Source: Mobula hypostoma
Taxonomy: Eukaryota
NCBI RefSeq assembly: GCF_963921235.1
Contig: NC_086117.1
Location: 18,166,001-18,230,000 of the forward strand
Reading direction: 5' to 3'
DNA: 64,000 bases
In this document: piece after piece, positions 32,901 through 55,700 of the stretch
How positions within the stretch are numbered: the stretch's first letter is position 1
Layout of the letters: each line of letters opens with the position of its first letter
Program-made: the position numbers and the translations under genes
Notes under the pieces: generated by a model
What the model was told of the DNA's origin: nothing
Seen by the model: only the letters and a program-made list of their open reading frames with translations
The model's database searches: none

Positions 32901-34733
32901 TTAGCTTGTTTATTTCGGCTTTTTTCTTAAAGATGTGCTGGGTGCTCTCCGGCTACCGCTGCACCCCTGCACGCTTCGCGGCCCGGTATCGGTCCGCAGC
33001 CCGGAGGTTGGGGACCACTGGACAGCAGCAGAAGACCACAAACATACACTCAGTGTATGTTATTAGTGTACTCACTGTACTTTATTGGATATAGTGGCCA
33101 CTTTATTACACTGGTACATGGAGCTTAGAAAAATAGGGGGCTATGTGGTAGGGAAATTCTAGGCGGCTTCTAGAGTAGGTTACATGGTCAGCACAACATT
33201 GTGGGCTGAAGGGCCTGTAATGTGCTGTAGATTTCTATTTTTCTATAGTAGGTACCTAAGTAAGTGGCCACTGAGCATATACTCTGCCCTTCTATCATTC
33301 CAGCCAGTTAGAATGTAAGACATAGGAGATAAATTAGGCTCTTTGATACATTGAGTCTGCTCTAGCATTCAATCATTATTATCGTTCTCAACCCCATTCT
33401 CCTGCCTTCTCTCCATAACCCTTGATGCTCTTTCTCTTTCCCCAGTGCATGGAGGGTTCTCCGAGTGGTTAGACTGGGGGCCGTGCAGTGTCACCTGCGG
33501 CAGAGGTGTAGAAGAGCGAATCCGACTGTGTAACAACCCCTCACCTGCCAATGGAGGGAGATCATGCCATGGAGTGGATGTTGAGTCAAGACAATGTAAC
33601 GCAGATCCTTGTCAAGGTAAATATAAAGAGCCACCATTGGTTTATAATGGCCTCTTGGTTAAAGTATAATTCAAGTGACCAAGGCTTATACACTATAGGT
33701 TTTCTACATCCCAACTCTGCTCAAATTGGTGGTAGTTGTTGAGAAAGGTTCAAAAGCTTGTTTTATAGCGCCATCTACTGGCCTGAACTGCAACAACATC
33801 ATTGTGGGGCATCTGTTCACACCTTGGATTTCCTTTCTAAATGTTTACATGGTGTTAAACACAAGAGATTCTGCAGGCGCTAGAAACCCAGGGTAGCGCA
33901 CACAAAACACTGGAGAAACTCAGCAGGTCAGGCAGCATTTATGTGTTGTGTGTCCAAAGATGATGAACAGAAATCGAGAAGTTGGATACAGTCGAGTGCT
34001 TTAAATAAAATGTGGCGTTATGCACTTAGTATCTTACCCTTTTCTCTTTTGGAGGTGCTGATATTGACACCTCAAGAAGATAGCAGCAATCTTTAAGGAC
34101 CCCCACCAGCCAGTACATGCCCCCTTCTCACTACTACCATCAGGGAGGAGGTACAGGAGCCTGAAGACACACATTGTGTTTTAGGGACAGCTTCTTCACC
34201 TCTGCCATCAGATTTCTGAATGGTCCATGAACCTATGAACACTAATTCACTATATTAGCTTCCTTTTTGCACTATTTAGTTGTTATTTTATATATATTTC
34301 TTATCGTCATTTATAGTATATTTCAAGTGTATTTTATATACCACTGTCATAAAACAACAAATTTCACAGCACCAGGAAATCTGCAGATGCTGGAATTTCA
34401 AGCAACACACGTCAAAGTTGCTGGTGAACGCAGCAGGCCAGGCAGCATCTCTAGGAAGAGGTACAGTCGACATTTCGGGCCGAGACCCTTCGTCAGGACT
34501 AACTGAAAGAAGAGCTAGTAAGAGATTTGAAAGTGGGAGGGGGAGGGGGAGGTCCGAAATGATAGAAGAAGACAGGAGGGGGAGGGATGGAGCCAAGAGC
34601 TGGACAGGTGATTGGCAAAAGGGATATGAGAGGATCATGGGATGGGAGAAAGAAAAGGGGAGGGGGGAAACCCAGAGGATGGGCAAAGGGTATAGTGAGA
34701 GGGACAGAGGGAGAAAAAGGAGAGAGAAACTAA

Positions 34734-34764
<31 letters not shown>

Positions 34765-37700
34765 CGGATGGTTTATGAGGGGGAGGTGAGGCATTAGCAG
34801 AAGTTTGAGAAGTCAATGTTCATGCCATCAGGTTGGAGGCTACCCAGACGGAATATAAGGTGTTCTTCCTCCAACCTGAGAGTGGCTCCATCTTGACAGC
34901 AGAGGAGGCCATGGATAGACATATCAGAATGGGAATGAGACGAGGAATTAAAATGTGTGGCCACTGGGAGATCCTGCTTTCTCTGGTGGACAGATTTCAC
35001 AATATTTCAGTGGTAATAAACCTGACTCTGATTCTGTTGCAAGGGACAGGTTTAATGTCTGGCTGAATTCCTCAGATACCTAACATCCCTGTTCAATCGC
35101 AAACTTCACCAGGAATTGTCAGTAACAGGACTTTAGAACTGGTCCTGACCTTGTCCACACCAAGAGCACACCTTCCAACAAGAGGTAGGTGGGGTGGGGG
35201 GGGGGGGTTGGATGTCAGACTGATCTCTGATAGGTTCAGTCGGAACCAATCTGGTATCCTCCTGCTCTGACGTCACTGGGAGTACAGCCAGTGTTCGCGG
35301 TTCCCAGCAGGCATCTGTTGAGCCGCTGAAAGATTCTGATTGGTCACCGATTCCCTGTCAGTTAGTGGGCAGTGGTCCGGCTGGGGTCTGTGGTGAGAAT
35401 GTTTCAGGTCACTGGCATGTGGAATTGCAGTAACCCACTCCCGGAATTCTGTCTTCTGTCTTCAGTAGATTTAGTAGCCACAGGTCCAAAGTTCAAAGTA
35501 AATGTAGCATCAAAATACATATATGTCGCATATATGTAGTATATATATATAGTAATACATATAGTATATCAAATACATATACTACCCTGAGATTCACCAT
35601 AGAACAAAGAAATACAACAGAATCAATTAAAAACTACACACTAATCAAAGATGAACAAACAATCAAAATAAGACAAGCTGTGCAAATACAATGATAATAA
35701 TAATAATAGATGGATGGATGATACTGAGAACATGAATTGCAGAGTACCTGAATGTGAGTTGTAGGTTGTAGAATCAGTTCAGTGTTCAGGTAAGTGACGT
35801 TGTCCACGCCGGTCTGGCGCCTGATGGTTGCAGGGTACGTATTGTTCTTGAACCTGTTGCTGTAGGACCTAAGGCTCCTGTACCTCCTTCCCGATGGCAG
35901 CAGTGAGGAGAGAACAGGGCCTGGATGGTGGGGGTCCTTTATTATGAATGCTGCTTCTTGAAGCAGTGTTCCTTCTGCTTAAAGGTCAGTCGGTAACTAG
36001 CCGACAGATAATGGAGATGGTACAAGCTTGTGTAGAGCAGATGCAGTTGGTGCTGCTGACTGCCCAGGATATGCATTCCCAGTCTTAGCCTTAGTACAGC
36101 TAGGGTGGACCCTGGGGGGGCAGATATTCCAGGAAGAGAAACCTGCAGGTTTGGTCTCTTCCAAACTCCACCCTCTGAGACTCTGCAGATTGTTGTTGAA
36201 TCTCAGGAGCAGGTCCGGTAGAGTTCCTGCAGTTCTTTGCATGGCCTTGGGATGTCCGTGACAGTACATTCTTTGAAGTACAGTCACTCCTGGGATATCG
36301 CTGACGTGGCAGCCAGCTTGTGCATTGCAAGCCCCACAAGCAGCAATCAGTTTGAGAGTCACCCAGAGAACGTTCAGTGACAAGTGGGCGACACCATAGC
36401 CGGGAGGGATGAAGGAGATCAGAATCACAATCAGGTGCATTATACGTCATGAAATTTGTTGCTTTGTGGCCGCAATGCAAGAAATAAAAATGATTATAAA
36501 TTATAAGACAAATAAATATGCAAAAGAGGAATAGCAAGTTCGTGAACTGTTCAGAAATCTGGAAGATGAAGATGAAACTGTTCCTAAAACGTAGAGTGGG
36601 GGAGGTTGGGCTTCAGGCTCCCTGATGGGAGAAACGGGAAGAGGGCATGTTCCGGATAGTGAGGGTCCTGAGAAACGGGAAGAGGGCATGTTCCGGATAG
36701 CGAGGGTCCTGAGAAACGGGAAGAGGGCATGTTCCGGATAGCGAGGGTCCTGAGAAACGGGAAGAGGGCATGTTCCGGATAGCGAGGGTCCTGAGAAACG
36801 GGAAGAGGGCATGTTCCGGATAGTGAGGGTCCTGAGAAACGGGAAGAGGGCATGTTCCGGATAGCGAGGGTCCTGAGAAACGGGAAGAGGGCATGTTCCG
36901 GATAGCGAGGGTCCTGAGAAACGGGAAGAGGGTATATTCCGGATAGTGAGGGTCCTGTGAAACAGGAAGAGGGTATGTTCCAGATAGTGAGGGTCCTTAG
37001 TGATGGATGCTGCCTTCTTGAGGCATTGCCTTTTGAAGGTGTCCTTGATGACGGTGGTGTAGTGGTTAGCACGACGCTTCACAGTACAGGTGACCCGGGT
37101 TCGATTCCCACCACTGCCTGTAAGGATTTTGTATGGTTTCCCCTTGACCAGCGGGTGCTCCAGTTTGCTCCCACAGTCCAAAGACGTACCGGTTGGTAGG
37201 TTAATTGGTCACTGTAAATTGTCCCGTGTTTGGGCTTGGAATAGATCGGGGGATTGTTGAGTGGCGCGGCTCGAAGGGCCGGAAGGGCCTATTCCGTGCA
37301 GTACCTTAATGAATAAAATGAGGAAAGTTGTGCCTGTGATGGAGCCAGCTGGGTTTACAAGCCCTGCAGTCTTTTACCATCCTGCACATTGGCACCTCCA
37401 CACCAGGAGGTGATGTAACCAGTCAGAATGCAATCCCCTATGCAGCTGTAGGTTTTGCAAGGAGTCTTCGGTGACATACCAAATCTCCTCCAGCTCCTAT
37501 TGAAGAAGAGCTGCTGGTGTGCTGGCTTCGTGGTTGCAGCAATGTGTTGGACCCAGGATGGACCTTCTGAGATGGTGGTGCTGTTAACCTGGAGGTACTG
37601 ATGGCGTTGCTTTGTCTTGGCAGTGAATGGGAGCTGGGCTTCCTGGAGCTCCTGGAGCCCGTGCAGTAGGACCTGTGGGGGCGGGCAGAGCAAGCGCTAC

Positions 37701-40700
37701 CGATCGTGCAGCAACCCACCTCCGGCCTGGGGCGGCAAGGCTTGCTCAGGGCCCGATGTACAGATGCAGAGATGTGGCATGGAACTGTGCCCAGGTGAAT
37801 GGAGGGGGGGGCAAGATGGGCGACAGGGTGGCGACAGAAATGATCGAGGGAGGGATGGTGGGATGGTGAGATTGGGGGAAGCAATGGCAGGAAAGTGGGA
37901 AGGGGGTGGTGAGGGCCTGGTCGGGGGAGGGGCTGTGGAGGAATGAAAAGGTTGGGGTTGAGGGGAATCAGAGAGAGGATATTTAGATGGAAGAATAGTA
38001 AGGTGGTGAGGTTGAGTAGGAGAATGGTGAGCAGTGGGGGAATGGTGGGTTTGTGGAGAGGTTAGTGGGGTTGGTGAATTGGTGAAGTGGGAATGGTTGG
38101 GAAAAAGGGAATAGTTGGGGGGGAGAGGAACAGTCGGAGAGGGGAACAGTAAGGGGAAGGGGAACGGTGGGGGGCGGGGGAGACGGTGGGGGGCAGGGGG
38201 AACAGTTGGGGGAAGGGGAATGGTCGGGGAGAGGGGAACATAGCATGAACATTGACTTTTCAAACTTCCGCTAATGCCCCACCTCCCCCTTGTACACCAT
38301 CAGTTATTTATTTATTTATATACACACATTCTTTTTCTCTCTCTCCTTTTTCTCCCTCTGTCCCCCTCACTATACCCCTTGCCCATCCTCTGAGTCCCCC
38401 CCGCCCACTTTTCTTTCTCCCTGGGCCTCCTGTCCCATGATCCTCTCATATCCCTTTTGCCAATCACCCGTCCAGCTCTTGGCTCCATCCCTCCCCCTCC
38501 TGTCTTCTCCTGTCATTTTCAAATCCCTTATTAGCTCTTCTTTCAGTTAGTCCTGATGAAGGGTCTCGGCCCGAAACGTCAACTGTACCTCTTCCTAGAG
38601 ATGCTGCCTGGCCTGCTGCGTTCACCGGCAACTTTGATGTGTGTTGCTATCATTACCATATCTTCAACTGCAGACCGACAGCCATGTGTTGGGCTGTAAG
38701 CGGCAGTCTGTCATGGCCCAACAAGTCACTCTGCCAAAGGAAAAATTAGTAATTAAGGGTCAAAGATCAACTGTACTCGCCATACATTTACAGTGTAGGA
38801 ATTTGTTGCGGTGTGTTGGTGGGACATGTAACAAAAGCACCATCATCAGCAATTATAAAGAATTATATAAAAATAAAGTCAGATGTTAAAGTACAGATCT
38901 GGAATAAAATGTGCTTCAGTACATAAATACCAGTATGTATTTACAATATAAACAGCATAATTGGAAGTGGTGTAAAGTGCTTACAGTGCAGTGACTGAGA
39001 TAATAAATAGAGGGGGGTGGGGAGGCTAACTAGAAAGGTTGACCAGATTAACTGCTTGGGGGAAGAAACTTTTAAGATGGCATGAAGTTTTTTTTTTAAT
39101 AGCCCTATAGCACTTCCAGAAGGGAGCTTTTTTGGAAAAGGTAGTTAGCTGGGTGGGTAGTCACTACAATGATTTTTTCTCCTACCATTCATCCCTCCCC
39201 ACTAATCTTCCTCCTGGCACATATCCTTGCAAGCGACCAAAATGCTACACTTGCCCATTCACTTCCTTCCTCACCCCCATTCAGGGACCCAGACAGTCCT
39301 TCTAAGTGAGGCAACACTTCACCTGCGAATCTGTTAGGGTCGTCTTTTGTATCCGGTGCTTCCAGAAAGCAGCTTTTGGATAAGGTTTGTCGGGTGGGTA
39401 GCGTCAACAGTGGGTTTTTTCCTGACCATTTCCTTGTCCTGGACACATGCAAGTCCTGCAGTGATGGTAGACTGTGGCCTAGGGTAAATCCCAGGGTAGA
39501 GACATCCCAAGATCAAATAGAAGTTAAACTTGGGGGCTGTAGTTGTACGGACCAAGTGTAGAAGACTGGGATTTACAGTTCTGTTTCCCCATTTTGTTAA
39601 CTGTTGATTGTGTGAACATTGTCTGTGGCAGTGAATGGAGCGTGGAGTCCCTGGCAGCAATGGAGTGAGTGCTCAGCCTCCTGCGGAGGGGGCAAGCAAC
39701 TGAGGCAACGGCGATGCAACAGTCCTCCGCCGAATGCCAAGGGAAGACCCTGTCCCGGAGAGAGCGCTGAGTCTGTCAGCTGCGGCCTGCGTTCATGCCC
39801 AGGTGTGTGAGAGTGTGTGAAGCAGTGGGCCAACTTGTACACACGGCAGGCCCGGCTTCCATTCTCGTATGTTAGTGTGTCTGCAGGGAAGTAAGCCGGG
39901 ACCAGTTTCTATCCAAGCGTTATCGGCTTTGAGTTAGACTCCTATAGACTTTAATCCATGATCCAGGCCAACGTTCCCACAACAGGCCTAAGCGGATAGG
40001 AACTGTTAACTATTGTAAAAATGACACACTAAGGACATAAACAAATAGAAGAAACAATTTGTTTTGTCACATGGTTCTCATTCATAATAACATCATTTCT
40101 GATTTTACAGATGAACCCAATTGCCCACCCAATCTTCTTTCAGGTCCATGAGTTTTGTTTTCTGTCGGAGAGGGAACATCAACTCAGACCATGAGAGGCC
40201 TGCGTCGGGCATTTTCATGCCTTACAAGGCGCAGATTGGAACCCTGTGTGGGACGCCACTCCTCACACAGACACTAGAGCAATGTGTGGTTAAGTGCCTT
40301 GCTCAAGGACACAAACACGCTGCCACAGCTGAGGCTCGAACTAGCGACCTTGAGATAACTAGACGAACGCCTTAACCACTTGGCCATGTGCCCAACAGGT
40401 GTTTTCTGTTGACTGCACATCAACATTTCTGTATTGTCCACTGACATGGATATTTCAAAAGATCCCAGTCTCCCGATCTAGACATCAACTAGTTATAGTC
40501 TCTCAATGGTGGGAGACTTAAGGAAACTATGTTGACTTTGGCCTATTTTATCATGTGCCCCCAAGTTTCCTGACACCTCAACCTTATAGTGGGCTCTACC
40601 ATCTTTCCAAGCGGTGAAGTCAGGCTCACTGGCCGATAATTTCCTTTTTTTCTGCCTCCCTCCCTTCTTAAAGCGTGGAGCAACATTCTGGGTGTTTGAA

Positions 40701-43700
40701 GTGCCACCCATCCCTACTCACCAGTAAGAGTATGAAGAACCTACAAGATTTTTTAAAGATTAACTTTACTTGCCACGTGTACATTGAAACACCGAAACAT
40801 AGGACCATAAGATCTAGGAGCAGAAGTAGGCCATTCGGCCCATTGAGTCTGCTCCGCCATTCAATCATTGGCTGATCCAATTCTTCCAGTCATCCCCACT
40901 CCCCTCCCTTTACCCCATACCCTTTGATGCCCTGGCTAATCAAGAACCTATCTGTCTCTGCCTTAAATACACCCAATGACTTGGCCTCCACAGCTGCTCG
41001 TGGCAACAAATTCCACAGATTTACCACCCTCTGACTAAAGTAATTTCTCCACATCTCTGTTCTAAATGGACCTCCTTCAATCCTGAAGTTGTGCCCTCTT
41101 GTCCTAGACTGCCCTACCATGGGAAATAACTTTGCCTTATCTAATCTGTTCAGGCCTTTTAACATTCAGAATGTTTCTATGAGATCCCCCCTGCCCCCCA
41201 TTCTCCTGTACTCCAGGGAATACAGCCCAAGAGCTGTCAAACATTCCTCATACGGTAACCCTTTCATTTCTGGAATCATTCTCGTGAATCTTCTCTGAAA
41301 CCTCTCCAATGTCAGTATATCCTTTATAAAATAAGTAGCCCAAAACTGCACACAATACTCCAAGTGGGGTCTCATGAGTGCCTTATAGAGCCTCAACATC
41401 ACATCCCTGCTCTTATATTCTATAGCTCCAGAAATGAATGCCAACATTGCATTCGCCTTCATCACTACCGACTCAACCTGGAGGTTAACCTTTAGGGTAT
41501 CCTGTACAAGGTCTCCCAAGTCCCTTTGCATCTCTGCATTTTGAATTCTCTCTCCATCTAAATAACAGTCTGCCTGTTTATTTCTTCCACCAAAGTGCAT
41601 GACCGTACACTTTCCAACATTGTATTTCATTTGCCACTTCTTTGCCCATTTCCCTAAGCTATCTAAGTCTCTCTGCAGGCTCTCTATTTCCTCAACACTA
41701 CCCACTCCTCCAGCTATCTTTGTATCATCGGCAAATTTAGCCATAAATCTATTAATCTCATAGTCCAAATCATTAACATACATCATAAAAAGCAGCGGTC
41801 CCAACACCGACCCCTGTGGAACTCCACTGGTAACCGGCAGCCAGCCAGAATAGGATCCCTTTATTCCCACTCTCTGTCTTCTGCCTATCAGCCAATGCTC
41901 CACCCATGCTAGTAACTCCCCTGTAATTCCATGGGCTCTTATCTTGCTAAGCAACCTCATGTACGGCCTTCTGAAAATCCAAGTGCACCACATCTATTGC
42001 ATCTCCTTTGTCTACCCTGCTTGTAATTTCCTCAAAGATTTGCACTTGGTTAGTCAAGCAGGATTTTCCTTTCAGGAAACCATGTTGGCTTTGGCCTCTC
42101 TTGACATGTGCCTCCAGGTTCTCCGTAATCTCATCCCTAACAATTGATTTCAACAGCTTCCCAACCACTGATGTCAGGCTAACAGCTCTATAGTTTCCTT
42201 TCTGCTGCCTCCCACCCTTCTTAAATAGCGGAGTAACATTTGCAATTTTCCAGTCATCTGGTACAAAGCCAGAATCTACCGATTCTTGAAAGATCATTGT
42301 TAATGCCTTCACAATCTCTCCAGCTACTTCCTTCAGAACCCGAGGGTGCATTCCATCAGGTCCAGAAGATTTATCCACCCTCAGACCATTAAGCTCCCTG
42401 AGCACCTTCTCATTCGTAATTTTCACTGCACAAACTTCACTTCCCTGACACTCTTGAATGTCTGGTAAACTGCAGACGTCTTCCACTGTGAAGACTGATG
42501 CAAAATACGCATTCAGTTCCTCTGCCATCTCTGCATCTCTCATTACAATATCTCCAACATCATTTTCTATTGGTCCTATATCTACCCTCAACTCTCTTTT
42601 ACCCTTTTTTTATACTTAAAAAAAGGCTTTTAGTATCGTCTTTGATATTAGTCGCCAGCTTCCTTTCATAATTCATCTTTTCCATCCTAATGACCTTCTT
42701 AGTTTCCTTCTGCAAGTTTTTAAAAGCTTCCCAATCCTCTATCTTCCCACTAGCTCTAGCTTCATTGTATGCCCTCTCTTTTGCTTTTACTTTGAAACAT
42801 GGTCGTTTTGCATCAACAATCAGCACAGTCCAAGATGTGACGGGCACTCCAGTGCCAATGTAGCACGCCCACAACTTACTAACATCTTTGCAATGCGGGA
42901 GGAAACCAGAGCACCCAGAGGAAACCCCACAGTCACAGGGAGAACTTACAGACAGAGGCAGGAATGGAACCTAACGTTGCAGCCGGCGGTATAACGTGTT
43001 ACACTAACTGCTACGCCACTGTGCCGCCTCTTTACTAACCGGCGTGGCCCATTTGTTGCAGGTGTTCCAGGAAGGGCCAGAGGCAGCCTGATTGGCATCG
43101 TCAATGACAAGGAATTCGGGGTGGCATTCCTCGATGCCAATGTGACGGAAAACTCAGCCACGGGCATCACCAGTGTTCAGGCAAGCATCCAGAACTTGCC
43201 CAGCACTATCGGTAGGTATCAGGTGGCGATGGGGATGTTGCCATCGTTGTACAACGGTCACCAATATCATCCCCACTGCCCTCACCTCACTCCGGACTGA
43301 TGACAATTCGATTTGTGAGACACAAGAGACCATTGTCTTTCTCGCCAATTACTGAAATCTCTCTGAACCTGACGTAGATTCTGGACTCATCCTGATGTTC
43401 CACACTCCTGTCGTTCTTTCTGTATCAGCCTGGGTACTGAATGTTGAGGGGCTCTTCAGCTATACGTGGGCATCTTTAATCACAGGGTTTTAACAGAGGA
43501 TCAGAACCGACTCCACAAACGGCACATTTTCACTGAGAACACTGCCTGATGGTTCAGAGACCGCAAGGTCTGAATGACCAGGCATTGATTATTAGTTTGA
43601 TGCTCCCTAGCCCATTGATGATGAGGTGGGTAACTGTACAAGGCAACAACCTGAGTGTGAGATGGGCAGTGATGCCTGAACTGTTCCTTGTCCTGGGTGT

Positions 43701-46700
43701 CTCCTATGCTTCATATCTTCTGGTCCTTCCAGCTTCTATAATCTTTGCTCTCTCTCTGTCTCGCTCTCTTATTTGCTTTCTCGCTCTCTTTTATCTCTCT
43801 CTCACTCTTTTTCTCTCTCTTGCTCTCTTTCTCTCTCTCTCTCACTCTGTCACTCTATCTCTCTCTTTCTGTTCCATCTGACCTGAAACATTAACTCCTG
43901 ATTTTCTCTCCACCGTTGCTATAGATCTACAGTTTATTTTCAGCCAAGTTCCGCTGTTTCTATTTATCATTGTCTTTGGAAAACGTTGTTTAATTCGATA
44001 ACAAGTATTTCTGTTGCTGCTCTGACACGGTACCACGGCTGTCCCCGTTTCTAGGCCCTCTCATAAGGGTGCTGACCTCCACTTTCACCCCGGTCTACTG
44101 GTCGGTAGCCAGCCCAGCGTCAGGGACCACGAACGGATTCTCACTGACAAAGGGGGCTTTCAGGCAGGAGTCACAAGTGGAGTTTGCGACAGGTGAGTGG
44201 GTGTGACCCACGCGTGGGCTTCTTGTTGAGAGAAAACTGTGCGGGACTTGGGAATAAAGTGTGAAACTAACCCCGGGAGAGGATGAAGGGGACAGAATTC
44301 CAATCAGCAAGTACTGAGCAACTAGTATCAGTCTCCATTCTCAGGTCCTGTCCGATCATTGTGATTCCCACGTTGATTTTCTCAGCTTAAATCATTATTC
44401 CCATGGCCTCGGGCAAAGGCCAAGTCTTACAACAAAGGTTGGACATTGCAGTGGAGTGACTGAGAGCCCTGTACCAAGTGCTAATGGTGATGTTGGACCT
44501 AAATATTTATTCTTGTTTTATTGTTTGTTTATGTATTTATTTATTTGGAGATACAGCATGGTAACTGGCCTTTCTGGCCTCATGAGCCCCCCCCCCACCC
44601 CTCAGTTGCACCCATGTGACCAATCAAACCACTAACCCGTACATCTTTGGACTGTGGGAGGAAACCGGAGAACCCGGAGGAAACCCACACGGTCGTAGGG
44701 AGAATGTACGAACTCCCTGAAGACGGGACCGGAATTGAACCCACATTACTGGTGCTGTTATAGAGTTATACTGACTGCGCACTCCTGTTTACTTGTTATG
44801 GGCCGTGTCGTATGACGTGGGAGGTCATGGTCTTTCCATCACGATGATTATTCTTGGCAAATTTTTCTGCAGAAGTGGTTTGCCATTGCCTTCTTCTGGG
44901 CAGTGTCTTTACAAGAGGGGTGACCCCAGCCATTATCAATACTCTTCAGAGATTGTCTACCTGGCGTCAGTGGTCGTACAACCAGGAATTGTGATATACA
45001 CCAGTTGCTTGTATGACCATCCACCACCTGCTCCCATAGCTTCACGTGACCTTGATTGGCGTGGGGGGGGGTTCTCAGCAGGTGCTACACCTTGCCCAAG
45101 GGTGACCTGCAGGCTAGCGGACGGAAGGAGCACCTCATACCTCCTTTGCTAGAAATGTATCTCCACCCCACTCTACTGTGCCCCCCCAATAATGAAAGTA
45201 ATTGAATATGAAAAATTGAATACTATATAGAGAGTGCAGAGGAGATTTACAAGGATAATGCCTGGATTGGAGAGTGTGCCTTATGAGAATAGATTGAGCG
45301 AACTTGGCCTTTTCTCCTTGGAGCACTGTGGTGGCTGTGTGGAATGATACAATAGGGTCTTTTAAGAGATTCTTAGATCGGTACATGGAGCGTAGAGGGC
45401 TATGCGGTAGGAAAACTCTCGGCACAACGTTCCGGGCTGAAGGGCCTGTAATGTGCTGTAGATTTCTATGTTCTGTGTTCATCAAGGTTGCAACCTCCAA
45501 AGCAAACTTGGGAATTGCAGCCTTGATGATTCGTTGCATGATTGTTGAAAGCAGCAGGTTCATGGGATCGCCACCATCCACAGGTTCCCTTCCAACCACG
45601 CACCATCCCGACCGGGTGATGGATTGCCATTTCTCCATGGTAACCAAGCCTAAACCCGGGACCTCCTGAGTCAAAGGCATAATGGGGGTACCGTCAGAGA
45701 AAAGACCGCAGCTCTCAAGGTCAACAGAGAGCCAACAATTCCTGTTCTTCCCAGTGGTGTCCAAATCACATTCATGAACAAAAAAATAATAATTTTAGGT
45801 TCAGAATACTTGACTGGGCCAGTGGATGCTTGAATGTCTGACCGGGTGTGAGAGAGGGAGTGACCAGGAAGCTAACCCTGAATGCTGCCCGACTGACGGA
45901 TGTCTGCTCTGTAGGTGTCAGTATAAACTTGTACTGGGATCTTGTGTGGAGCCAGTGACACCTTGCATTAATTGCCATTTACTTATCCTGCACGTTGGGG
46001 AGTATTCTGGCCCAGACACGATCCTTCATTGGGCGGGTGGTGATTCCCAACGCTGAGCCGCCTGACATGCTGACGGCAGTTTCCAATCCTCAGGCGAAAC
46101 CCTCCGAATGACCCACATTGCGCGCGGCGTCGATGCAGAGGGAGTGCTCCTGTTCGACATTGTGATCAATGGTAACATCCCCAGGATCCTCACGAGTGCA
46201 GACATTGCTGTGAAGGTGAGTCATCCTCTTTAGCCTGCCTGCTGGACTGTCGTAAACCCTGTCATAGTTAACGACGCCTCGCCTTTGATTTGCTGCATCA
46301 TCGCTCAGTGTTCCAGAGTAGATTTCGAGCATTTTCTTAGCCTTGTGTTGAAAATGTTAGCTTTTGTGTAATTTTACTGAGAGCTGTTTCTTTGCTCCTT
46401 TTCAAAGACTATAAAACATACTAACAGAATGAGGCCATTCAGCCCATCGAGGCTGCTCTGCCATTCCATCATGGCTGATTTATTTTCCCTCTCAGCCCCA
46501 TTCTCCTGCCTTCTCCCCGTTACCTTTGACGCCCCGACTAATCAAGAACCTATCCCGCTCCGCTTTAAATATACCCGATGACTTGGCCTCCACAGCCATC
46601 TGTGTATTGCACAGACTGACCACCCTCTGGCTAAAGAAATCCCTCCTCATCTCTGTTCTAACTGGATTCTAAAGCGTTTCTGTTTCCTTTCTCTTCCTTG

Positions 46701-49700
46701 AGGATTTTCTCAATCCCAATCCGGCCAGGAATTTCTCCAGTTACCTGCTCTTCCCAGCACTGTGGTTAGGTGACAGCAACGACAACCGGCAACAATCGTC
46801 TGTTGATTCAGAGACACAACTTCAAATCCTAAAGGGATTCTAGTAGAGTCATAGAGAAGTACAGCACAGAAACAGGCCCTTCGGCCCATCTAGTCCATGC
46901 CAAACTATATATCTACCTAGTCCCTTAGATCGGCATCCGGACCATAGCCCTCCATTCCCCTCCCATTCATGTACCGATCCAAACTTCTCTTAAACAATGA
47001 AATCAAGCTCACACGCACCACTTGTGCTGGCAGCTCATTCCACACTCTGAGTGAAGAAGTTTCCCCTCATGTTCCCCTTAAACTTCTCACCTTTCACATT
47101 TGACCCATGATCTCTGGTTGTAGTCCCACTTAACCTCAGTGGGGAAAAGTCTGCTCGCATTTATCCTATTTATACCCCGCATAATTTTGTATACCTCTAT
47201 CAAATCTCCTCTCCTAAAGAATGCAGTCCTAACCTATTCAATCTTTCCTGATATCTCAGGTGTTCCAACCCAGCAACATTTCTCCAATCTTTCAACCTTG
47301 TTCACATCCTTCCTGTGGGTGGGTGACCAAAACTGCACACAATACTCCAAATTAGGCCTCACCAATTTCTTATACAACTTCAACATGACATCCCGTCTTC
47401 TGTACACAATACATTGATTTATGAAGGCCAATGTGCCAAAAACTTTCTTTACGACCCCATCTACCTGTGACACCACATCCAACGAATTATGTACCTGTAT
47501 TCCCAGATCCCTTCGTTCTAACACACTCCTCAGAGCCCTACTGCTCACAGTGTAGGACCTCCAGGTTGGTCCTTCCAAAGTTCAGGACCCTGCCCTTGTC
47601 TGCATTGAGTTGCATCTGCCATTTTTCAGCCCATTTTTCCCGCTAACGCAGATCCCTCTGCAAGCCATGATAGCCTTTCTCACTGTCCACCGCACCCCCG
47701 ATCTTGGTGTCATCACAAATTTGCTGATCCAGTTGACCATTTTATCACCCAAGGTCATTGATATAGATGACAGACAACAAAGGACCCAGCACAGTTCCCT
47801 GCGGCACTTCACTAATCACAGGCCTCCAGACAGAGAGGCAACGCTCTACTACCACTCTCTGTCTTCTCCCACAAAGCCAAAGTCTAACCTTAAACCAAAT
47901 AAACCTTGTGAACAAGGGGCATAAGATCTTATAAAATGGTGGAAGAGGCTGAAGGATTGAGTGGTCCTTCATCACAGGGTTTGACGAGCTCCCATCAACG
48001 CCACAATCTCTTCGACCTCTTACCATCAGGCAGAAGGTACCCAGTGTGTGAACAAGGACTGTTACTCTAGGTAACGACTTTTCCCCCCCAGGCCGTGAGT
48101 CTTCTACCACCCAGTACACACAGTTAATGACAGTATCTGAACACCCTGCTACCACCCAGTACACACAGTTAATGACAGTGTCAGTAACAGTAACACTGTT
48201 GTATATTTAACTATACATCACTTATGCACTTTATCTCAACTTGTGCATTGAAAGAATACTTTTTTAAATCTGTTGATATTATTGTGTTGATGTTATTTTA
48301 CATGCTCTGTGTGATATACGTGCTGTGTGTTTTTTCATCTTGGTCCCAACTGAAGTGGGTGGCCACTGGGAAGATCCCACTTTTTCTGGTAGACGGAACA
48401 TAGGTGCTTAGCGAAGTGGTCTCCCAAACTAGCTCTATGCATGTGTACGGTTGAATGACAGTAAACTTCCGTCTGAACTTGAACTACGTCTGCTCCTTCA
48501 TTCATATGTTTGCATGTCGCCATAGACTTCAGTCATGGAATAAAACTCAACAGAAATCTTTAAATCCTGTTTTCCATGAATATCTGTTAATAATGAACCT
48601 GTGATTCAGTATTAATTCTGGTCCAAAATGTATTTTTTTAACATAGGATTTCAGTGAAAGTTACGTACAGATGGGTCCTGGGCAGCTGTATGGATGGTCA
48701 ACCCAAATGTTCATTCAGGATGGCTCACCTATTTCCCTTAAGTGTAACCACACCGTTGTATATGAATCTACTCTGGGTCGCCAGCCTTCTGTCTTACAGA
48801 TTCTGAAGGCTGAGTATATTTCCATCTACTATTCTGAGGAAACAGAGGCGTTGAGGTTCCACATCACAACCTCCTTCAGGAAAGGTGAGCACTTAAGTTA
48901 CAGAAAGTTGTTGTCTCTAAAAGTACCCAGTATTTTTTTCTTTGAATCAACTTTCCCCTGAAGTACATGAAAACAAATTCTCATTATTCCCTGGAGCCTT
49001 ATCAATGCCCAGTAGATCATGAGATTTATGCAGATTGGAGGTCTTGATCCTCAAAAGAGAGGTCTTTTGGTCTTGCCTCCCAAGAGAGGGGCAGGAGTCC
49101 AGGTTTTGCTCACTCCCATCACTGACCATTTTTGTTGGTGGACGGTGTGATATAGCAGGGGCTGGCTGGTAAAGGACCTTGAATTTCTAGGCATTGAGTG
49201 TGAGGCCCAACCTCTTGTAAGGTCTGGTGAATGAGCCAACAATTTCGTGAAGCAGAGCTTCTGAGCAAATGCACATTGTCTACATACTCCACCCAGCCAT
49301 TAGAAAGAACACTTCTCTACCCTGTGTCTCATGCCCTCAAGATGGTCCAAAGTGCCTTACAGCCCTTGACTTAATGTAGGGAGAAATAGCCCCTGATTTG
49401 TTGGCACCAAGGTTACATGTAACACCAGTTGATTGAATTCAGATGAGAGAATGGCCAGGACTCTGAAACACATGTCACAGTACCTCAGGATCCCAATATG
49501 TCTCCAGTGCCTTCTCCAGCAGGACTTGAATCAAGATTACTATGGGCTGTAACCTTGATGGGTTCTTAACATTGAGGCTTAGTTTTGGAGTGCAGGTTCT
49601 CAATCACAAACCCCACAAGGAGAATTTCTCTGAGATTCTTAGAGACTAATTAAGTGCTTGGAAAAAAAATATTCTTCACAAACCAGGGATATGACCAATA

Positions 49701-52700
49701 CTAAGGGGTAGGTCAACAAACCTGGCCTGAAGGCAATGGCTTAATCACTGGATATGGTGAGATGTTTAAGTCCTTCTTTTTATGAGTAAATCTCCTGCTA
49801 AGTTTTTGTTTGCATTCCTGTTGTATGTTTCAGATTCCAAAGGAGATCAGTGTCCCAAGGGATTTTTACTTGACTCAGCCTTGTACTGTGCAGGTAAGTT
49901 CTTATTGTTATGAATGCTTAGGGGAGGTTGTCAGCTGGAACTCCACTTGCCTCAAGGCCTGCTTACGTATTCAAGTTGTGCAACTGTCGTGGAGACCAAC
50001 ATAATTCCAAAGCCGCTTACCATTCCTTCACTGTCTAAAGCTGGGGTTCCCATGGACCAATACGATTAACCAAGGGACCCCTAGTCTAAAGTAATTGTCT
50101 GCAGAAGCTGACGTATTTGTGAGAGAAAAGGAGTCTTTCTCTATCCCCGTCTCTGGGAATCAATGCGGAGTGGATTTGGGCTTCAGGACTCGCCAGACTG
50201 AGGGATTCTGGGATACTGTAGGGAGGCGGCACTGAGGTAAAAGGTCATCCATAGTCTTATGCAATGGCAGAACAGACGTGAAAGATGGAATGGTCTGTTC
50301 CTACTTTTGTTTCTATTGTTTCTGTAGTTTGGCATCAACAAGTTACCAGTAAGTACATGTTTACATCTTTCTAACAATCAGTCATTAACATCAAATTCGT
50401 AGCTGTGGTGAGAAGAGAATAACGTCCCTTCGACGCAGTAGGAGACACTGTTTCAAAGCACCTTATGGAATGGGGTGTGTGAACTATTGATAGGACAGCT
50501 GAGACATGATCAAACAGTGTTCCATACCCCTTGCCAGTATTATATTGATTACAGGTTGTGGGTGACACTGGTACAGCCACATTTCTTTCCCCTCGCCAGC
50601 CGTGCTTTGAAAGGGTCTTATCCCTGAACACTCAAGGCATTGAATTGGAAATGGTCTATATTTGTCACATGTACTGGAATACAGTGAAAGGCTTGCACGA
50701 CGCACTGCAGGCCCATCTGCCCATAATGTTGTGCTGACCCTTTAAACATACTTCAAGATCAATCTAACCCTTCCCTCCCACATAGCCCTCCCTTTCTCTT
50801 TCATCCATGTGCCAATCTAAGTCATAGAGTCAAAGATAGAGCACAACAGCATGCCTAGTCCATGCTGAACTGTTACCTTGCCTCGTCCCATCGACCTGCA
50901 CCAGGACCATAGCCTTCCATTACCCTCCCATCCATGTACTTATCCGAACTTCACTTAAACGTTGAAATTGAACCCACCTCCTCTGGCAGTTCGTTCCACA
51001 CTCACACCACCCTCTGAGTGAAGAAGATCCCCCTCTGGTTCCTCTTAAATATTTCACCTTTCACCCGTAACCTATGACCTCTAGTTCTTATTTCATCCAA
51101 CCTCAGTGGGAAAATCCTGCTTGGATTAACCCTATCCATATCCCTCATAATTTTGTAAACCTCTATCAGATCTCCCCTCGTTCTCCTACGGTCCAGGGAA
51201 TAAAAGTCCTAAACTATTCAACCTTTCCTTGTAATGCAGGTCCTCAAGTCTGAGCAACATCTTAATACTTTTTCTGTTCTCTTTCAATCCTATTGATATC
51301 TTTCTTGTACGTTGGTGACCAGAAATGTGCACAATATTCCAAATTTGGTCTCACCAATGTCTTAAACAACTTCAACATAACATCCCAACTCCAATACTCA
51401 ATATTCTGATTTAAGAAGGCCAATGAGCCAAGAGCTTTCTTTATGACCTTAACTCTTTATGTCCCCAACTGTAGCTTGCCTCTACCATCACCCTTGGTAG
51501 AGTGTTCTATGCACTTACCACTCTTGGTGTAAAACACCTAACTCTGATGTTCCCCACTATACTTTCCTCCAATCGCCTTAAGATTATGCCCTCTTGTAGT
51601 AGTCAATTCTGCCCTGGAATAAAGATAGGCTGTCCACTCTGTCTATGGCTCTTATCATCTGATACATGCCTATCTTGTCACCTTTGGGTGGCGGGTGGGG
51701 ATATGTCTCTACCAAGGTAGGTGTAAGGTGCTCCTTCCCTCCCTGCAGATCACTCTTGGGCAAAGTGTACCACCTGCTTAGCCCCACAATCAGGGTTGCG
51801 TGAACCCGTGGGAGCAGGTGGTGGACGGTCATATAAGCAGTGCACATCACAAGTCCTGGTTATGCGACCACTGACGCCAGGCAGACAATCTCTGAAGAGT
51901 ATTGATAATGGCTAGGGTCACCCGTCTTGTAAAGACACGGCCCAGAAGAAGGCAATGGTAAACCACTGCCAAGAACAGTCATGGTCACGGATAGAGAAAG
52001 GGAATGGCAGTGTGAGGGGGTTCCACCCCACAGGCAGCAAACCCTCGCACATTAGGGATAGATGTAAGTCCATGATTGCCTATGTCATACGACATGGTAC
52101 ATAATGACGATGATGATCTTGTCACCTCTCACCCTTCTTCGCTCTAAAGAGGGAAGTCCAGGCTCACTCAACCTATCATACAGATCAGATCATTACACGG
52201 AGCACTGAGGTAGAACGAGGTGAAACAATAACAGAATGTGGAATAAAAGTGTAACAGCTGCAGAGAAAGTGGAGTTTAGGTAAATAATAAGGTGCAGGAT
52301 CATAACAAGCTGGAGTGAGATCGAGGGTTCAATTTATCTCCCAGTAATGATGGAAAAAGTAGTGACTCAGTAATGATTAAATAGTTAAAGGTGTGTGTGC
52401 AAATCAGCATGTGGGACCAGGAGGGGAGGAGAGAACTGATGGCATTCCTGCACCATTGCTCCTATCAGTCCTCTCGGTGGTAAAGGCTGCAACAATGGAC
52501 TGCTTAACCTACTGGAAAAAGATCAACATCTTCCTGAATTTTTGATCTGGCCACAGGTCCCCCTTGCTTTCTTTTATTTCTGTGAGAATTGGGACTTCTC
52601 TAAAGTCTGTTCACTGGTCCTTTGCCTTGGCTGTTCCCACCTGGCTCACTACCTGCTGCCGTGTCCTTGTGTTACCCAGAGAGTAGAACCGGTCTTGTGT

Positions 52701-55700
52701 TCCTGTAGAGACGCGGAGGGTATCTTCTCCTCCTCTGTCCACAGGCTTTCCACTGAGAATTATCCGTGTAACTGAAGAGCTCCATGTGTCTCAGCACTAT
52801 GGATTTTGGGAATAGTGAGTGCCATGGGCCGGAGAGGGTGCCCATAGTGTCGAGACTGATTTGTGAACGTGGGCTTCTGAAAGCCAGAGGCACTGAACTT
52901 ACAACAGAGGAGCTGCAGCTTCTCTGAAGAGCACCACGGTAGCGTGGCGGTTAGTGTGACGCTGTTACAGCTTGGGGCACTGGAGTTCAGAGTTCAGTTC
53001 CAGCGTCACTTGTAAGGAGTTTGTACGTTCTTCCCGTGACAGTGTGGGTTTCTCCAGGTGCTCTGGTTTCCTCCCTCAGTCCAAAGACCTATTGGTTAGT
53101 AGGTTAATTGCTAATTGTCCTGTGATGAGGCGAGGGTTAAATAGATGGTTTACTGGGAGACACAGCTCATTGGGACAGAAGGACCTGTTCTGTGTGGTAT
53201 CGCTAAAATAAAAAGTGAAAAGAGCTGGCCAGTTGGTCTGTGCTGGTGTTCGTCCCGATGCTGATGTTGTGGCTCAGAATTATTTTTTTTTATTTTAAGG
53301 TTCGTAGGGACAGCACGGGGGTCAGGTGGCAGGTTAGGGTTAGAGGTCAGGGGCAGTAGAGTCTGGGCGGGAGCCAGTATTTGGAGCACTCTGCAGTCAA
53401 AGGTCAGTGATCCTGGAGGATGGGTTGGCAGGCGCTGAGGGTGGAGACCAGTGATCCCCAGATCAGTGAGCCCCGGACTGGAGGTTCATACAAGCTGAAG
53501 TCAAGGTGGCTGGTAAACCCACCCCCCCCCCCCAGATCACTGGGCTTGGAGGTTTGTGTCAGTCCAGAAATAGCAGCCCGAAGATCAAACCCAATGATCG
53601 GCAAGTCCTGGGTCAAGACCCAGAGGTCTTTGAAGTCGGAAATTGGAGCCCCAGTGTCTGAGAGTCTACAGCAGAGGGCTGGAGGCTCAGATTGGAGGCC
53701 TGCCTATGTGTGTGAGTGGCTGGCTGGATGGGTAAGAGGGTGGGTGGGAAAGAGGCCTGTTTTTGCTGTTGTTTGTGTTGTTCTGCTGAACATTTTGGCC
53801 ATTCTAAGTGACACTTGCAGGCTGCCTCCAGCACATATTCAGACTATGCTGATCGCCGGTGCAAACGATGCACTTCAACTGTATGTTTTGACGTACCTGC
53901 GATAAATAAATCTGAATCTGAATCTCATCTGATTCCATCTCCTCACCATTTCGTAACACTGTTGTTTTCTTTCTGTTTTCCGTTCTGTTGGCAGATGTGA
54001 ATGAGTGCCAGCTTGGCACCCACATGTGTCACGTTGGCCAGGACTGTCAGAATGAGGTGGGCTCCCACCGCTGCCTGCTGCGTTGTGGATCCGGTTTCAG
54101 GCGGTCTGTAAGAGGACCGGGTTGTGAAGGTACTGTGCGTGTTAACCATCTGTCAGGAAAAATTGATCCAATGGTAATGAACTGGTGGATCACAGAACGA
54201 TGGGGTGTACTGCCCTCACATTTGTCCCTCAAGATTAGAGTGGGTCATCAGCCCAACCTTGTCTCCTTGTTCTTCCCCATTTGGCTTCTGCCTGCCTTTC
54301 TCCCTCTCGCACCATATATCTTCAGTATTCCTATGACCCCTCTTCCTTTCTCAACCCCCACCTTTTCCTCCATTCGCCCCCTTTCTTGATGGCTCTCAGT
54401 ACTACACTGCAGCCCAGATGTCTGCAGTGGGACTTGACCCTCAAATGTTAACTCAGAGGTGAGACCCTGGAGTTTCAGCAGACTTTGCAAGGAGTTCATT
54501 GCATGGAGTAATCATTGTACTCAAGGGCAATCTTATTACCTTCACCTCGTTAATGCAAATATCTAATCAGCCAATCATGTGGCAACAATCAGTTCATAAA
54601 AGCATGCAGACATGGTCATGAGGTTCAGTTGTTGTTCCAAGCAAACATCAGAATGGGGAAGAAATGTGATCTAAGTGACTTTGATCGTGGAATGATTGCT
54701 GGTGCCAGATAGGGTGGTTTGAGTGTCTCAGAAACTGTTAATCTCCTGGGATTTTTACAGACAGCAATCTCTAGAGTTTACAGAGATTGATGCAAAAAAT
54801 GAAAAAAACACCCAGCGAGCAAAAATGCCGTGATAATGAGAGAGGTCGGAGGAGAACGACCAGACTGGCTCTATCTGACAGGAAGGTGACAGTAACTCAA
54901 TTAACAACATTTTTCAAATTACAGCAGTGGTGTGCAGAAGAGCATCTCTGAACACACATAATCAAACCTTAAAGCGAGTGGGTTACAGTGGCAGAAGACC
55001 ACAATCATACACTCAGTGGCCACTTTATTAGGTACCTCCTAAATCTAATGAAGTGGCCACAGAGTGCAGTTCACTATTTTGGTTCTTATTTTTGAAATGT
55101 TAAGCTGAAGGAGTGTGTAGCAGCAGGTTTTCCAACCGAGGAGTAAGTTCAGACCCAACCCTGGCCCTGATCCAGCTTGCCTGAGGACCACATCTACTCG
55201 ATTACTCACAGGTCAGGAAGGATATTTGCCTGATCTTCCTTCTTGTCTTCTTGCATGATGTCTCGTCACTGTACAGGCCAAAATCAAACTGGACCTCACT
55301 CTAAACTTCAAAGTTCAATGTAAATTTATTATCAAAGTACATATATGTCACCAAATACTACCCTGAGAATCAATTTCTTTCAGGCATTCACAGCAGAAAA
55401 AAAGAAATGCAATAGAGTCAATGGAAAACTACACACAAAGGCTGACAAGCCACCAATGTGCAAAAGAAGACAAATTGTGTAAATACAAAAAGTAAATAAA
55501 TAATTAAATAAATGTGCGACGAAGAGGTGTAGAGTCATTGAAGGTGAATCCATAGGTTGTGATCAGTGATCAGTTCAGTGTTGAGGTGAGTGAAGTTATC
55601 CTCGCTGGTTCAGGAGCCTGACGATTGAAGGGTAATAACTGCTCCTGAACCTGGTGGTGTGGGATTCCAAATCACCTGTACCTCCTTCCTGATGGTAGCA

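What the first reader, a model, noticed from the sequence alone, without database searches (positions are those of the whole stretch)
35362..35449. Fossil TSP1 exon (repeat 2) preserved in a hemicentin intron
Seen: a pyrimidine tract plus CAG followed, in the same phase 1 as all live TSP1 exons, by [16 protein letters not shown], then after a deletion NCSNPLPEF. WxxWxxW and CSNP are TSP1 hallmarks. Known (recalled): HMCN1 repeat 2 starts VDGSWSEWSLWEECTRSC, so the TGA replaces the first Glu of WEEC. Inference: a dead exon inside a live gene, lost by skipping and then decay. Annotation pipelines would miss it.
Basis: partly seen in the sequence, partly recalled or inferred. Interest (0 to 1): 0.8.

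Follow-up and report, generated by a model that had tools for sequence, protein, structure and literature searches.

The report
Dead TSP1 exon in ray hemicentin-2
An intron of a live hemicentin-2-type gene of a ray holds the decayed front half of a thrombospondin-repeat exon that some sharks still use; it is a clear but ordinary example of how a modular matrix protein loses a domain.

Summary

**What is there.** At 35362-35449 on the + strand, directly after a pyrimidine-rich CAG acceptor and in the phase of the live exons, the DNA reads [11 protein letters not shown][13 protein letters not shown]. After a deletion of about 25 nt that shifts the frame, it reads NCSNPLPEF.

**Significance.** I translated the whole window in six frames with X at stops. 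This is the best hit to hemicentin TSP1 profiles outside the three live exons: 13 bits against at most -1.8 for background and at most 6.3 in 60 shuffles. It is single-copy in the window.

**The gene.** It is the hemicentin-2-type paralogue of a batoid, sister to little skate in a tree. Its live TSP1 exons are repeats 1, 5 and 6.

**Relatives.**
- Sevengill shark and sawshark keep repeats 1, 2, 4, 5 and 6.
- Skate keeps 1, 4, 5 and 6.
- Amphibians keep 1 and 4; ray-finned fishes keep 1; amniotes keep none.

**Which repeat.** The relic fits repeat 2 best, at roughly 70%. Repeat 4 is not excluded.

**Expression.** Spliced transcript contigs from two species join exon 1 directly to exon 5, and none lies on the relic.

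**Not supported.** The Pfam TSP_1 model does not detect the relic. A possible 3' half beyond an inserted repeat element is not above noise.

The scan noted this same stretch once more under another id; it was not found on other DNA.

The parts
33446..33616 (+). Live TSP1 exon A. It is repeat 1 of the hemicentin TSP1 block: 171 nt, phase 1-1.
   Evidence: Pfam TSP_1 E 7.6e-16. Repeat-1 profile 104 bits against at most 78 for the other repeats; elasmobranch repeat-1 profile 115 bits. Covered by spliced contigs.
35349..35361 (+). Relic acceptor: a pyrimidine-rich tract ending in CAG, placed exactly where the live exons have CAG|TG.
   Evidence: Read directly. Profile position 1 (Val) starts at 35361, as it does at the G of the acceptor AG in the live exons.
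35362..35423 (+). Relic, N-terminal part (profile positions 1-19): [14 protein letters not shown] at 35394-35396, then ECFRS, a 6-nt insertion (35412-35417, 'LA'), then CG.
   Evidence: Best hit outside the live exons in the six-frame scan: repeat-2 profile 13.1 bits, next background -1.8. N-half profile 14.3 bits. Combined repeat-2 profile 12.3-13.6 bits. Alignment path.
35423..35449 (+). Relic, second block: NCSNPLPEF, the third-Cys 'CSNPxP' block, profile positions about 29-36. It is read in a shifted frame after loss of about 25 nt (profile positions 20-28).
   Evidence: Read directly. It is one of only 5 C[STNF][NDS]P.P motifs in six frames. It is joined to the first block by the frameshift-tolerant alignment with the repeat-4 profiles. 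On its own it is at noise, -3.6 bits.
35450..35482 (+). Possible further remnant, [11 protein letters not shown], in frame with the second block. Not statistically supported.
   Evidence: Comparison by eye with the repeat-2 and repeat-4 sequences printed. No profile extends into it.
35487..35961 (+). Interspersed repeat element inserted just 3' of the relic, where the rest of the exon should be.
   Evidence: 72% identity to a second copy at 55309-55736, and a partial copy at 34072-34162. Very deep coverage by many contigs in the runs.
37624..37794 (+). Live TSP1 exon B, which is repeat 5. It is joined directly to exon A in transcripts.
   Evidence: Pfam E 7.3e-14. Repeat-5 profile 89 bits and 104.5 bits with the elasmobranch profile. 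Contigs X1 record 1 and X2 record 8 run from 33444-33614 straight into 37622-37794.
39632..39802 (+). Live TSP1 exon C, which is repeat 6.
   Evidence: Pfam E 5.9e-14. Repeat-6 profile 78 bits and 87.8 bits with the elasmobranch profile.

Best explanation
The stretch is a pseudoexon: the decayed 5' half of an ancestral 171-nt TSP1 cassette exon of this ray's hemicentin-2-type gene. It is most likely repeat 2 of an ancestral block of repeats 1, 2, 4, 5 and 6, and possibly repeat 4.

Every TSP1 exon here is 171 nt and phase 1-1, so leaving one out keeps the reading frame. Once the exon was no longer needed or no longer spliced in, it collected these lesions:
- an in-frame TGA;
- a 6-nt insertion;
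- a frame-shifting deletion of about 25 nt;
- loss or displacement of its 3' half next to an inserted repeat element.

The gene now splices repeat 1 directly to repeat 5.

Shown here: the homology, the lesions, the position and strand, the live counterpart in sharks, and the exon 1 to exon 5 junction in RNA.

Inferred: that the exon was once functional in this lineage, and which event came first (skipping, mutation or repeat insertion).
For:
- Top hit to hemicentin TSP1 profiles outside the live exons in an unbiased six-frame scan, about 15 bits above background and 7 bits above the best of 60 shuffles.
- Same strand, co-linear, same splice phase, with an acceptor at the homologous base.
- Single copy in the window. 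Only the source species holds all of its 31-letter words, and one relative holds 24-33%.
- The live exons are repeats 1, 5 and 6.
- The sevengill shark and sawshark orthologues have repeats 1-2-4-5-6, skate has 1-4-5-6, and the catshark partial model has 1-4-5. The window groups with skate at 100/99 support.
- Spliced contigs of two species join 33616 to 37624, with zero depth on 35302-35455 in four runs.
- The lungfish isoforms differ by exactly one 57-residue TSP1 repeat, which shows cassette behaviour.
Against: - Pfam TSP_1 does not detect it.
- Only about 30 codons are recognisable. The second block is at noise by itself, and no 3' half or donor site is supported.
- The repeat-2 versus repeat-4 call rests on about 20 residues and ties with elasmobranch-only profiles in the frameshift-tolerant alignment.
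- If skate lost repeat 2 in the same event, the relic would be very old, while the more recently lost repeat 4 left no trace. That is less parsimonious than the relic being repeat 4.
- The RNA evidence comes from assembled contigs of small runs labelled RNA only by a guess. Rare inclusion of the relic cannot be excluded.
Confidence: 0.9

Rival explanations
1. Same mechanism, different identity. The relic is repeat 4, which is live in skate, catshark, sevengill shark and sawshark. It was lost recently in this ray's lineage, while repeat 2 vanished earlier without trace.
For: - Skate, the closest relative in hand, has repeat 4 but no repeat 2, so repeat 4 is the more recent loss.
- The frameshift-tolerant alignment with elasmobranch-only profiles gives 30.8 for repeat 4 against 30.1 for repeat 2.
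- PLPEF differs from the repeat-4 PPPQY by single-base changes, and TGA is one step from a TCA Ser in the repeat-4 WS.C motif (my reading of the codons).
- Q4, G7 and G9 match skate repeat 4.
Against: - The N-terminal half scores 13.6 against 2.6 bits with combined profiles, 8.6 against 4.4 with elasmobranch-only profiles, and 22.9 against 12.6 with HMCN1 profiles.
- The diagnostic columns Ser6, Leu10, Glu13, Arg16 and Ser-Asn after the third Cys are repeat-2 states.
Confidence: 0.27
2. Chance resemblance in G-rich intron DNA.
For: - W..W..W-type patterns occur by chance 2-3 times in the window.
- Pfam gives no hit.
- DNA-level searches are at noise.
Against: - The profile score is far above real-sequence and shuffled nulls.
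- The acceptor position and phase are correct.
- A co-linear CSNPxP block lies 27 nt downstream.
- It lies exactly in the intron where relatives have extra TSP1 exons.
Confidence: 0.01
3. A decayed fragment duplicated from a neighbouring TSP1 exon or copied from the HMCN1 paralogue. On this reading it is not a remnant of an exon that once sat here.
For: The highest residue identity is to HMCN1 repeat 2.
Against: - It fits none of the neighbouring repeats: repeat 1 scores -1.4, repeat 5 scores 2.5 and repeat 6 scores 2.4 bits, against 12.3 for repeat 2.
- There is no DNA similarity to them.
- The acceptor and phase are kept.
- Position and order match the repeat 2 or 4 slot that is occupied in sharks.
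Confidence: 0.02
4. The stretch is still used at a low level as a regulated stop-containing ('poison') cassette or as a splicing regulatory element.
For: - The acceptor looks intact.
- The locus is kept in a related species.
- The TSP1 exons of this gene family behave as cassettes.
Against: - Depth is zero in four RNA-type runs and the relic's words are absent from the RNA runs of the source species.
- No supported donor site exists.
- The lesions are those of neutral decay.
Confidence: 0.03

Closest known systems
Pseudoexonization: exon relics left in introns after exon loss. The term is used for duplicate-gene structure changes, e.g. PMC4852290.
   Same: An exonic sequence of one gene aligns to intronic sequence of its orthologue, which is the operational definition quoted in PMC4852290. 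The relic is on the same strand, carries disabling lesions and is absent from the mRNA.
   Different: Here a whole symmetric domain-cassette exon of a giant matrix gene is involved. The comparison could only be made at protein-profile level, because no orthologous DNA could be fetched.
TSP1 repeat 2 of hemicentin-1 and of shark hemicentin-2-type proteins (Heptranchias perlo P0190 residues 4539-4595; Pristiophorus japonicus P0191 residues 4558-4614).
   Same: The V.G.WS.WG.W.EC..(S/T)CG start and the C(S/N)(N/D)PP block. The relic sits right after repeat 1. It is the best-scoring repeat-specific profile.
   Different: The relic has a stop, a 6-nt insertion and a frame-shifting deletion, and lacks the last 20 or so residues, including three of the six cysteines.
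Mammalian and avian hemicentin-2, which has no TSP1 repeats.
   Same: Same paralogue, and the same direction of change: loss of TSP1 modules between the Ig array and the G2F domain. The general hemicentin architecture is described in bioRxiv 10.1101/2021.11.24.469833.
   Different: This ray still has three live repeats (1, 5, 6) and keeps a visible remnant of a lost one. This combination was not seen in any of the 126 hemicentin-2-type proteins examined.

Membership tests
TSP1 (thrombospondin type 1) repeat, Pfam PF00090 | Score above the Pfam gathering threshold. | tested here: not met
   No hit at E up to 10 for the X-joined peptide or its pieces. The live exons score 52-58 bits.
TSP1 (thrombospondin type 1) repeat, Pfam PF00090 | WxxWxxW tryptophan ladder followed by the C..(S/T)CG motif. 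| tested here: met
   WSGWGLW, then stop-E-C-FRS-(LA)-CG. It aligns to profile positions 5-19.
TSP1 (thrombospondin type 1) repeat, Pfam PF00090 | Six conserved cysteines in an open reading frame of about 57 residues. | tested here: not met
   Only the first three cysteines are recognisable. There is an in-frame TGA, a frame shift, and no supported C-terminal third.
Pseudoexon (relic of a lost exon) | Homology to an exon that is live in orthologues or paralogues. | tested here: met
   Repeat-2 profile 12-14 bits, the top hit outside the live exons in the window. Repeat 2 is live in two shark orthologues.
Pseudoexon (relic of a lost exon) | Lies in an intron of a live gene, on the coding strand, co-linear with the flanking exons. 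| tested here: met
   It lies between repeat-1 exon A and repeat-5 exon B, on the + strand, with its acceptor in the same phase.
Pseudoexon (relic of a lost exon) | Not part of the mature mRNA. | tested here: met
   Contigs of runs X1 and X2 join 33614/16 to 37622/24. Depth is 0 on 35302-35455 in four runs, and the RNA runs of the source species hold none of its words. These are contigs only, so rare inclusion is not excluded.
Pseudoexon (relic of a lost exon) | Orthologous position shown by alignment of flanking intron DNA in relatives. | not testable with these tools
   No elasmobranch genomic DNA could be fetched; the catshark locus came back without DNA.
Interspersed repeat family | Multiple copies in the genome. 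| tested here: not met
   No second copy of 34980-35486 in the window. Only the source species (share 1.00) and one relative (0.24-0.33) hold much of it. The rest of the genome was not searched.
Hemicentin-2-type gene (host gene) | Ig array, TSP1 block, nidogen G2F domain and EGF repeats, grouping with hemicentin-2 rather than hemicentin-1. | tested here: met
   Exon map. Identity is 77% to the skate, sevengill and sawshark hemicentin-2-type proteins against 54% to shark HMCN1. Tree. The best hits to the G2F exon are hemicentin-2 proteins.

The most novel reading that the evidence does not exclude
The TSP1 block of hemicentin-2 has been taken apart exon by exon, independently in several vertebrate lineages. 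The architectures seen are 1-2-4-5-6 in squalomorph sharks, 1-4-5-6 in skate, 1-5-6 in this ray, 1-4 in amphibians, 1 in ray-finned fishes and lungfish, and none in amniotes. In slowly evolving elasmobranch genomes the discarded exons may stay readable for a very long time. This relic may date from before the skate-ray split, together with the lost first EGF exon. If so, ray and shark introns would hold a datable record of domain loss in a giant matrix gene.
Probability: 0.3. Interest if true: 0.5.

Novelty: new member of a known kind. Interest (0 to 1): 0.35.

Why it matters
The relic shows one route by which a modular extracellular-matrix protein loses a domain: a frame-neutral cassette exon drops out of the mRNA and then decays in place.

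Together with the survey of 126 hemicentin-2-type proteins, it shows that this paralogue began with most of the TSP1 repeats that hemicentin-1 has today, and lost them stepwise and repeatedly. That is useful for annotating hemicentins; NCBI names the elasmobranch copies 'hemicentin-1-like'. It also bears on what the TSP1 block does, since it appears dispensable in hemicentin-2 but fixed at six repeats in hemicentin-1.

It is not a new kind of element, and it has no obvious present function.

Tried and rejected
- **Pfam scan** of the X-joined relic and of its pieces gave no family at E up to 10.
- **DNA-level search.** blastn and nhmmer with the three live exons found nothing above noise at the relic. 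The live exons do not find each other either, so this test is uninformative.
- **A candidate 3' half at about 36010-36067.** It reads [20 protein letters not shown] followed by GA where a donor GT would be, just beyond the inserted repeat. It looked attractive, but no half-profile or full profile lists it among the top hits. The frameshift-tolerant alignment gives it 10-15 bits, the same as other noise peaks in the intron. Rejected as unsupported.
- **A donor-like AAAG|GTCAGT at 35984/35985.** It is in the wrong phase and is not supported.
- **Relics of repeats 3 and 4** elsewhere in the 33617-37623 intron: none found.
- **Fetching the catshark locus.** The gene was found but no DNA was returned.
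- **Search for short elasmobranch fragments** with the catshark three-repeat block: no elasmobranch hits.
- **First homologue search** with the axolotl TSP1 region was swamped by hemicentin-1 and SCO-spondin-like proteins.
- **Literature searches** found no account of TSP1 repeat numbers in hemicentin-2 across vertebrates.

Full report
**1. The observation**

The context gattccctgtcag ends at 35361. From 35362 the DNA reads, in the phase-1 frame of the live exons, [11 protein letters not shown], a TGA at 35394-35396, then ECFRSLACG up to 35423. A frame shifted at 35423 then reads NCSNPLPEF up to 35449.

The three live TSP1 exons are 33446-33616 (A), 37624-37794 (B) and 39632-39802 (C). Each is 171 nt, phase 1-1, starts CAG|TG, and scores Pfam TSP_1 E about 1e-14.

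**2. The host gene**

The + strand carries the 3' part of a hemicentin gene:
- Ig exons from about 2,750 to 31,070;
- the TSP1 exons;
- nidogen G2F exons at about 43,050-49,900;
- EGF exons from 53,990 onward.

A search with a G2F exon against protein representatives returned hemicentin-2 proteins. The nearest, at 72% identity, is a partial model from the cloudy catshark. A later search found three full-length elasmobranch proteins of the same paralogue, which NCBI names 'hemicentin-1-like': little skate, sevengill shark and Japanese sawshark.

The window's exons are 77-78% identical to these three and 54% identical to shark hemicentin-1. In a maximum-likelihood tree on 1,348 columns the window is sister to the skate with support 100/99. 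The source is therefore a batoid.

**3. Is the match more than chance?**

The W..W..W pattern alone is not enough, because it also occurs by chance in the window. Pfam TSP_1 does not detect the relic. DNA searches with the live exons are uninformative, because the live exons do not match each other either.

I built repeat-specific profiles (T1 to T6) from 87 hemicentin-1 proteins with six TSP1 repeats. I then scanned all six frames of the whole window with X at every stop.

| Test | Relic | Best comparison value |
|---|---|---|
| T2 profile, whole window | 13.1 bits | next background hit -1.8 |
| T2 N-terminal half profile | 14.3 bits | next background hit -1.0 |
| Pooled hemicentin TSP1 profile | 4.5 bits | next background hit -3.3 |
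| 60 dinucleotide shuffles in 2-kb blocks | 13.1 bits | window maxima 0.8 +/- 1.9, highest 6.3 |

After the three live exons, the relic is the best hit of any profile. A Gumbel fit to the shuffles gives P about 3e-4 for the whole window, both strands and six profiles. For the a priori region (the + strand of the A-B intron) the figure is roughly thirty times smaller.

Independent points agree:
- The acceptor AG sits at the homologous base.
- The next conserved block, C-S-N-P-x-P, follows 27 nt downstream on the same strand. That motif occurs only five times in six frames, and three of those are the live exons.

**4. Not a repeat**

A self-comparison of the intron against the window finds interspersed repeats at 33879-33938, 34072-34232, 34401-34979, 35487-35961, 36538-37000 and 37086-37327. 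It finds none over 34980-35486.

In public runs, only DNA runs of the source species hold all sampled words of 35250-35486. DNA runs of a second species hold 24-33% of them, which suggests a diverged copy of the locus in a close relative. Other organisms hold at most 0.14.

**5. Which exon was it?**

The repeat-specific profiles give clear orthology for the live exons:
- A is repeat 1: 104 bits against at most 78.
- B is repeat 5: 89 bits against at most 78.
- C is repeat 6: 78 bits against at most 68.

Elasmobranch-specific profiles confirm this with 115, 104.5 and 87.8 bits.

The orthologues have these repeats:

| Species or group | TSP1 repeats present |
|---|---|
| Sevengill shark, sawshark | 1-2-4-5-6 |
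| Little skate | 1-4-5-6 |
| Catshark (partial model) | 1-4-5 |
| Nine amphibian entries | 1-4 |
| 93 entries, almost all ray-finned fishes, plus one lungfish isoform | 1 |
| Alligator, turtles, echidna, bat, hummingbird | none |

No hemicentin-2-type protein has repeat 3. The window's gene, with 1-5-6, has therefore lost repeats 2 and 4.

The relic's first block favours repeat 2:
- 22.9 against 12.6 bits as an isolated peptide;
- 13.6 against 2.6 bits with combined profiles;
- 8.6 against 4.4 bits with elasmobranch-only profiles.

My frameshift-tolerant profile-to-DNA alignment can add the CSNPLPEF block. It gives 35.9 (T2) against 28.0 (T4) with hemicentin-1 profiles, but 30.1 against 30.8 with elasmobranch-only profiles.

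The diagnostic columns split as follows:
- For repeat 2: Ser6, Leu10, Glu13, Arg16 and Ser-Asn after the third Cys.
- For repeat 4: Gly7, Pro34 and Phe36 (one step from Tyr).

Parsimony also leans to repeat 4, because skate still has it. I put repeat 2 at about 70% and repeat 4 at about 27%.

**6. The lesions**

The alignment path shows:
- a stop at profile position 12;
- two inserted codons (35412-35417);
- loss of profile positions 20-28 with a frame shift at 35423;
- nothing recognisable after position 36 or so.

The column with the stop holds Glu in hemicentin-1 and sawshark repeat 2, Gly in sevengill repeat 2, and Ser in repeat 4. TGA is one step from GGA or TCA, but two steps from GAA or GAG.

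A repeat element begins 38 nt after the relic (35487-35961). A tempting 3' half beyond it, at 36010-36067 and ending ..DCPG|GA, is not above noise and is rejected.

**7. Expression**

The runs offered were labelled RNA only by a guess. Two of their contigs are spliced, however:
- X1 record 1 (907 nt, source species) maps 33444-33614 to record positions 564-734 and 37622-37794 to 735-907, with no differences.
- X2 record 8 (1,396 nt, second species) does the same with three differences.

The AG at the junction is shared by both sides, so the junction is 33616>37624. Depth is zero over 35302-35455 and over 36072-36379 in all four runs. The RNA-type runs of the source species hold none of the relic's words.

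The live mRNA therefore skips the relic in both species. These are contigs, so rare inclusion cannot be ruled out.

**8. Mechanism**

All TSP1 exons are symmetric 171-nt cassettes, so skipping one is frame-neutral. The two lungfish isoforms differ by exactly one 57-residue TSP1 repeat. This shows that such exons are alternatively used in this paralogue.

The simplest reading is relaxed need for the repeat, then loss from the mRNA, then neutral decay. Whether skipping, a point lesion or the repeat insertion came first cannot be told.

**9. Comparison with what is known, and verdict**

This is pseudoexonization as the term is used for changes in exon-intron structure (PMC4852290). It occurs in a gene family whose general architecture is well described (bioRxiv 10.1101/2021.11.24.469833). 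I found no paper on TSP1 repeat numbers in hemicentin-2 across vertebrates.

It is a new example of a known kind and of modest interest. The wider pattern of stepwise, repeated TSP1 loss in hemicentin-2 is the more useful result.

Noticed in passing
window 33617-37623: The gene has lost repeat 4 as well as repeat 2. Skate, catshark, sevengill shark and sawshark all keep repeat 4, yet no second relic is detectable in the intron. The 1-5-6 architecture was not seen in any of the 126 hemicentin-2-type proteins examined.
   Followed up: yes
window 52640-52780 and 49824-49892: The first EGF after the G2F domain, present in sawshark (P0191, about residues 5022-5061), is absent from both the skate protein and the window's exon set. 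If real, its loss would be shared with skate and therefore old.
   Followed up: partly
window 33444-33616 (run X3 record 15) and 37794 (runs X1, X2): In run X3 a 325-nt contig covers exon A and then runs on for 82 letters that do not lie on exon B, and exon B has zero depth in that run. The X1 and X2 contigs both stop exactly at the end of exon B. Both hint at alternative use of the repeat-5 and repeat-6 cassette exons.
   Followed up: no
P0273 (Gopherus evgoodei hemicentin-2, UniProt model): One tortoise model carries a single repeat-4-like TSP1 domain, while the other isoforms of the same species and all other amniote models have none. This may be a rarely used or relic exon picked up by one annotation.
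   Followed up: no
window 36629-37000: A tandem array of 82-nt units at 92-96% identity lies in the same intron.
   Followed up: no
window 9738-10729 (+) and about 58450-60470 (-): Transposon remnants lie in other introns. One is a long ORF that looks like a Tc1/mariner-type transposase. The others are minus-strand ORFs that look like a LINE endonuclease and reverse transcriptase. I recognised them by eye and did not test them against profiles.
   Followed up: no
P0189, P0190, P0191 (NCBI names): The elasmobranch orthologues of hemicentin-2 are named 'hemicentin-1-like' by the source, probably because they still carry 4-5 TSP1 repeats. By G2F similarity and by the tree they belong with hemicentin-2.
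   Followed up: yes
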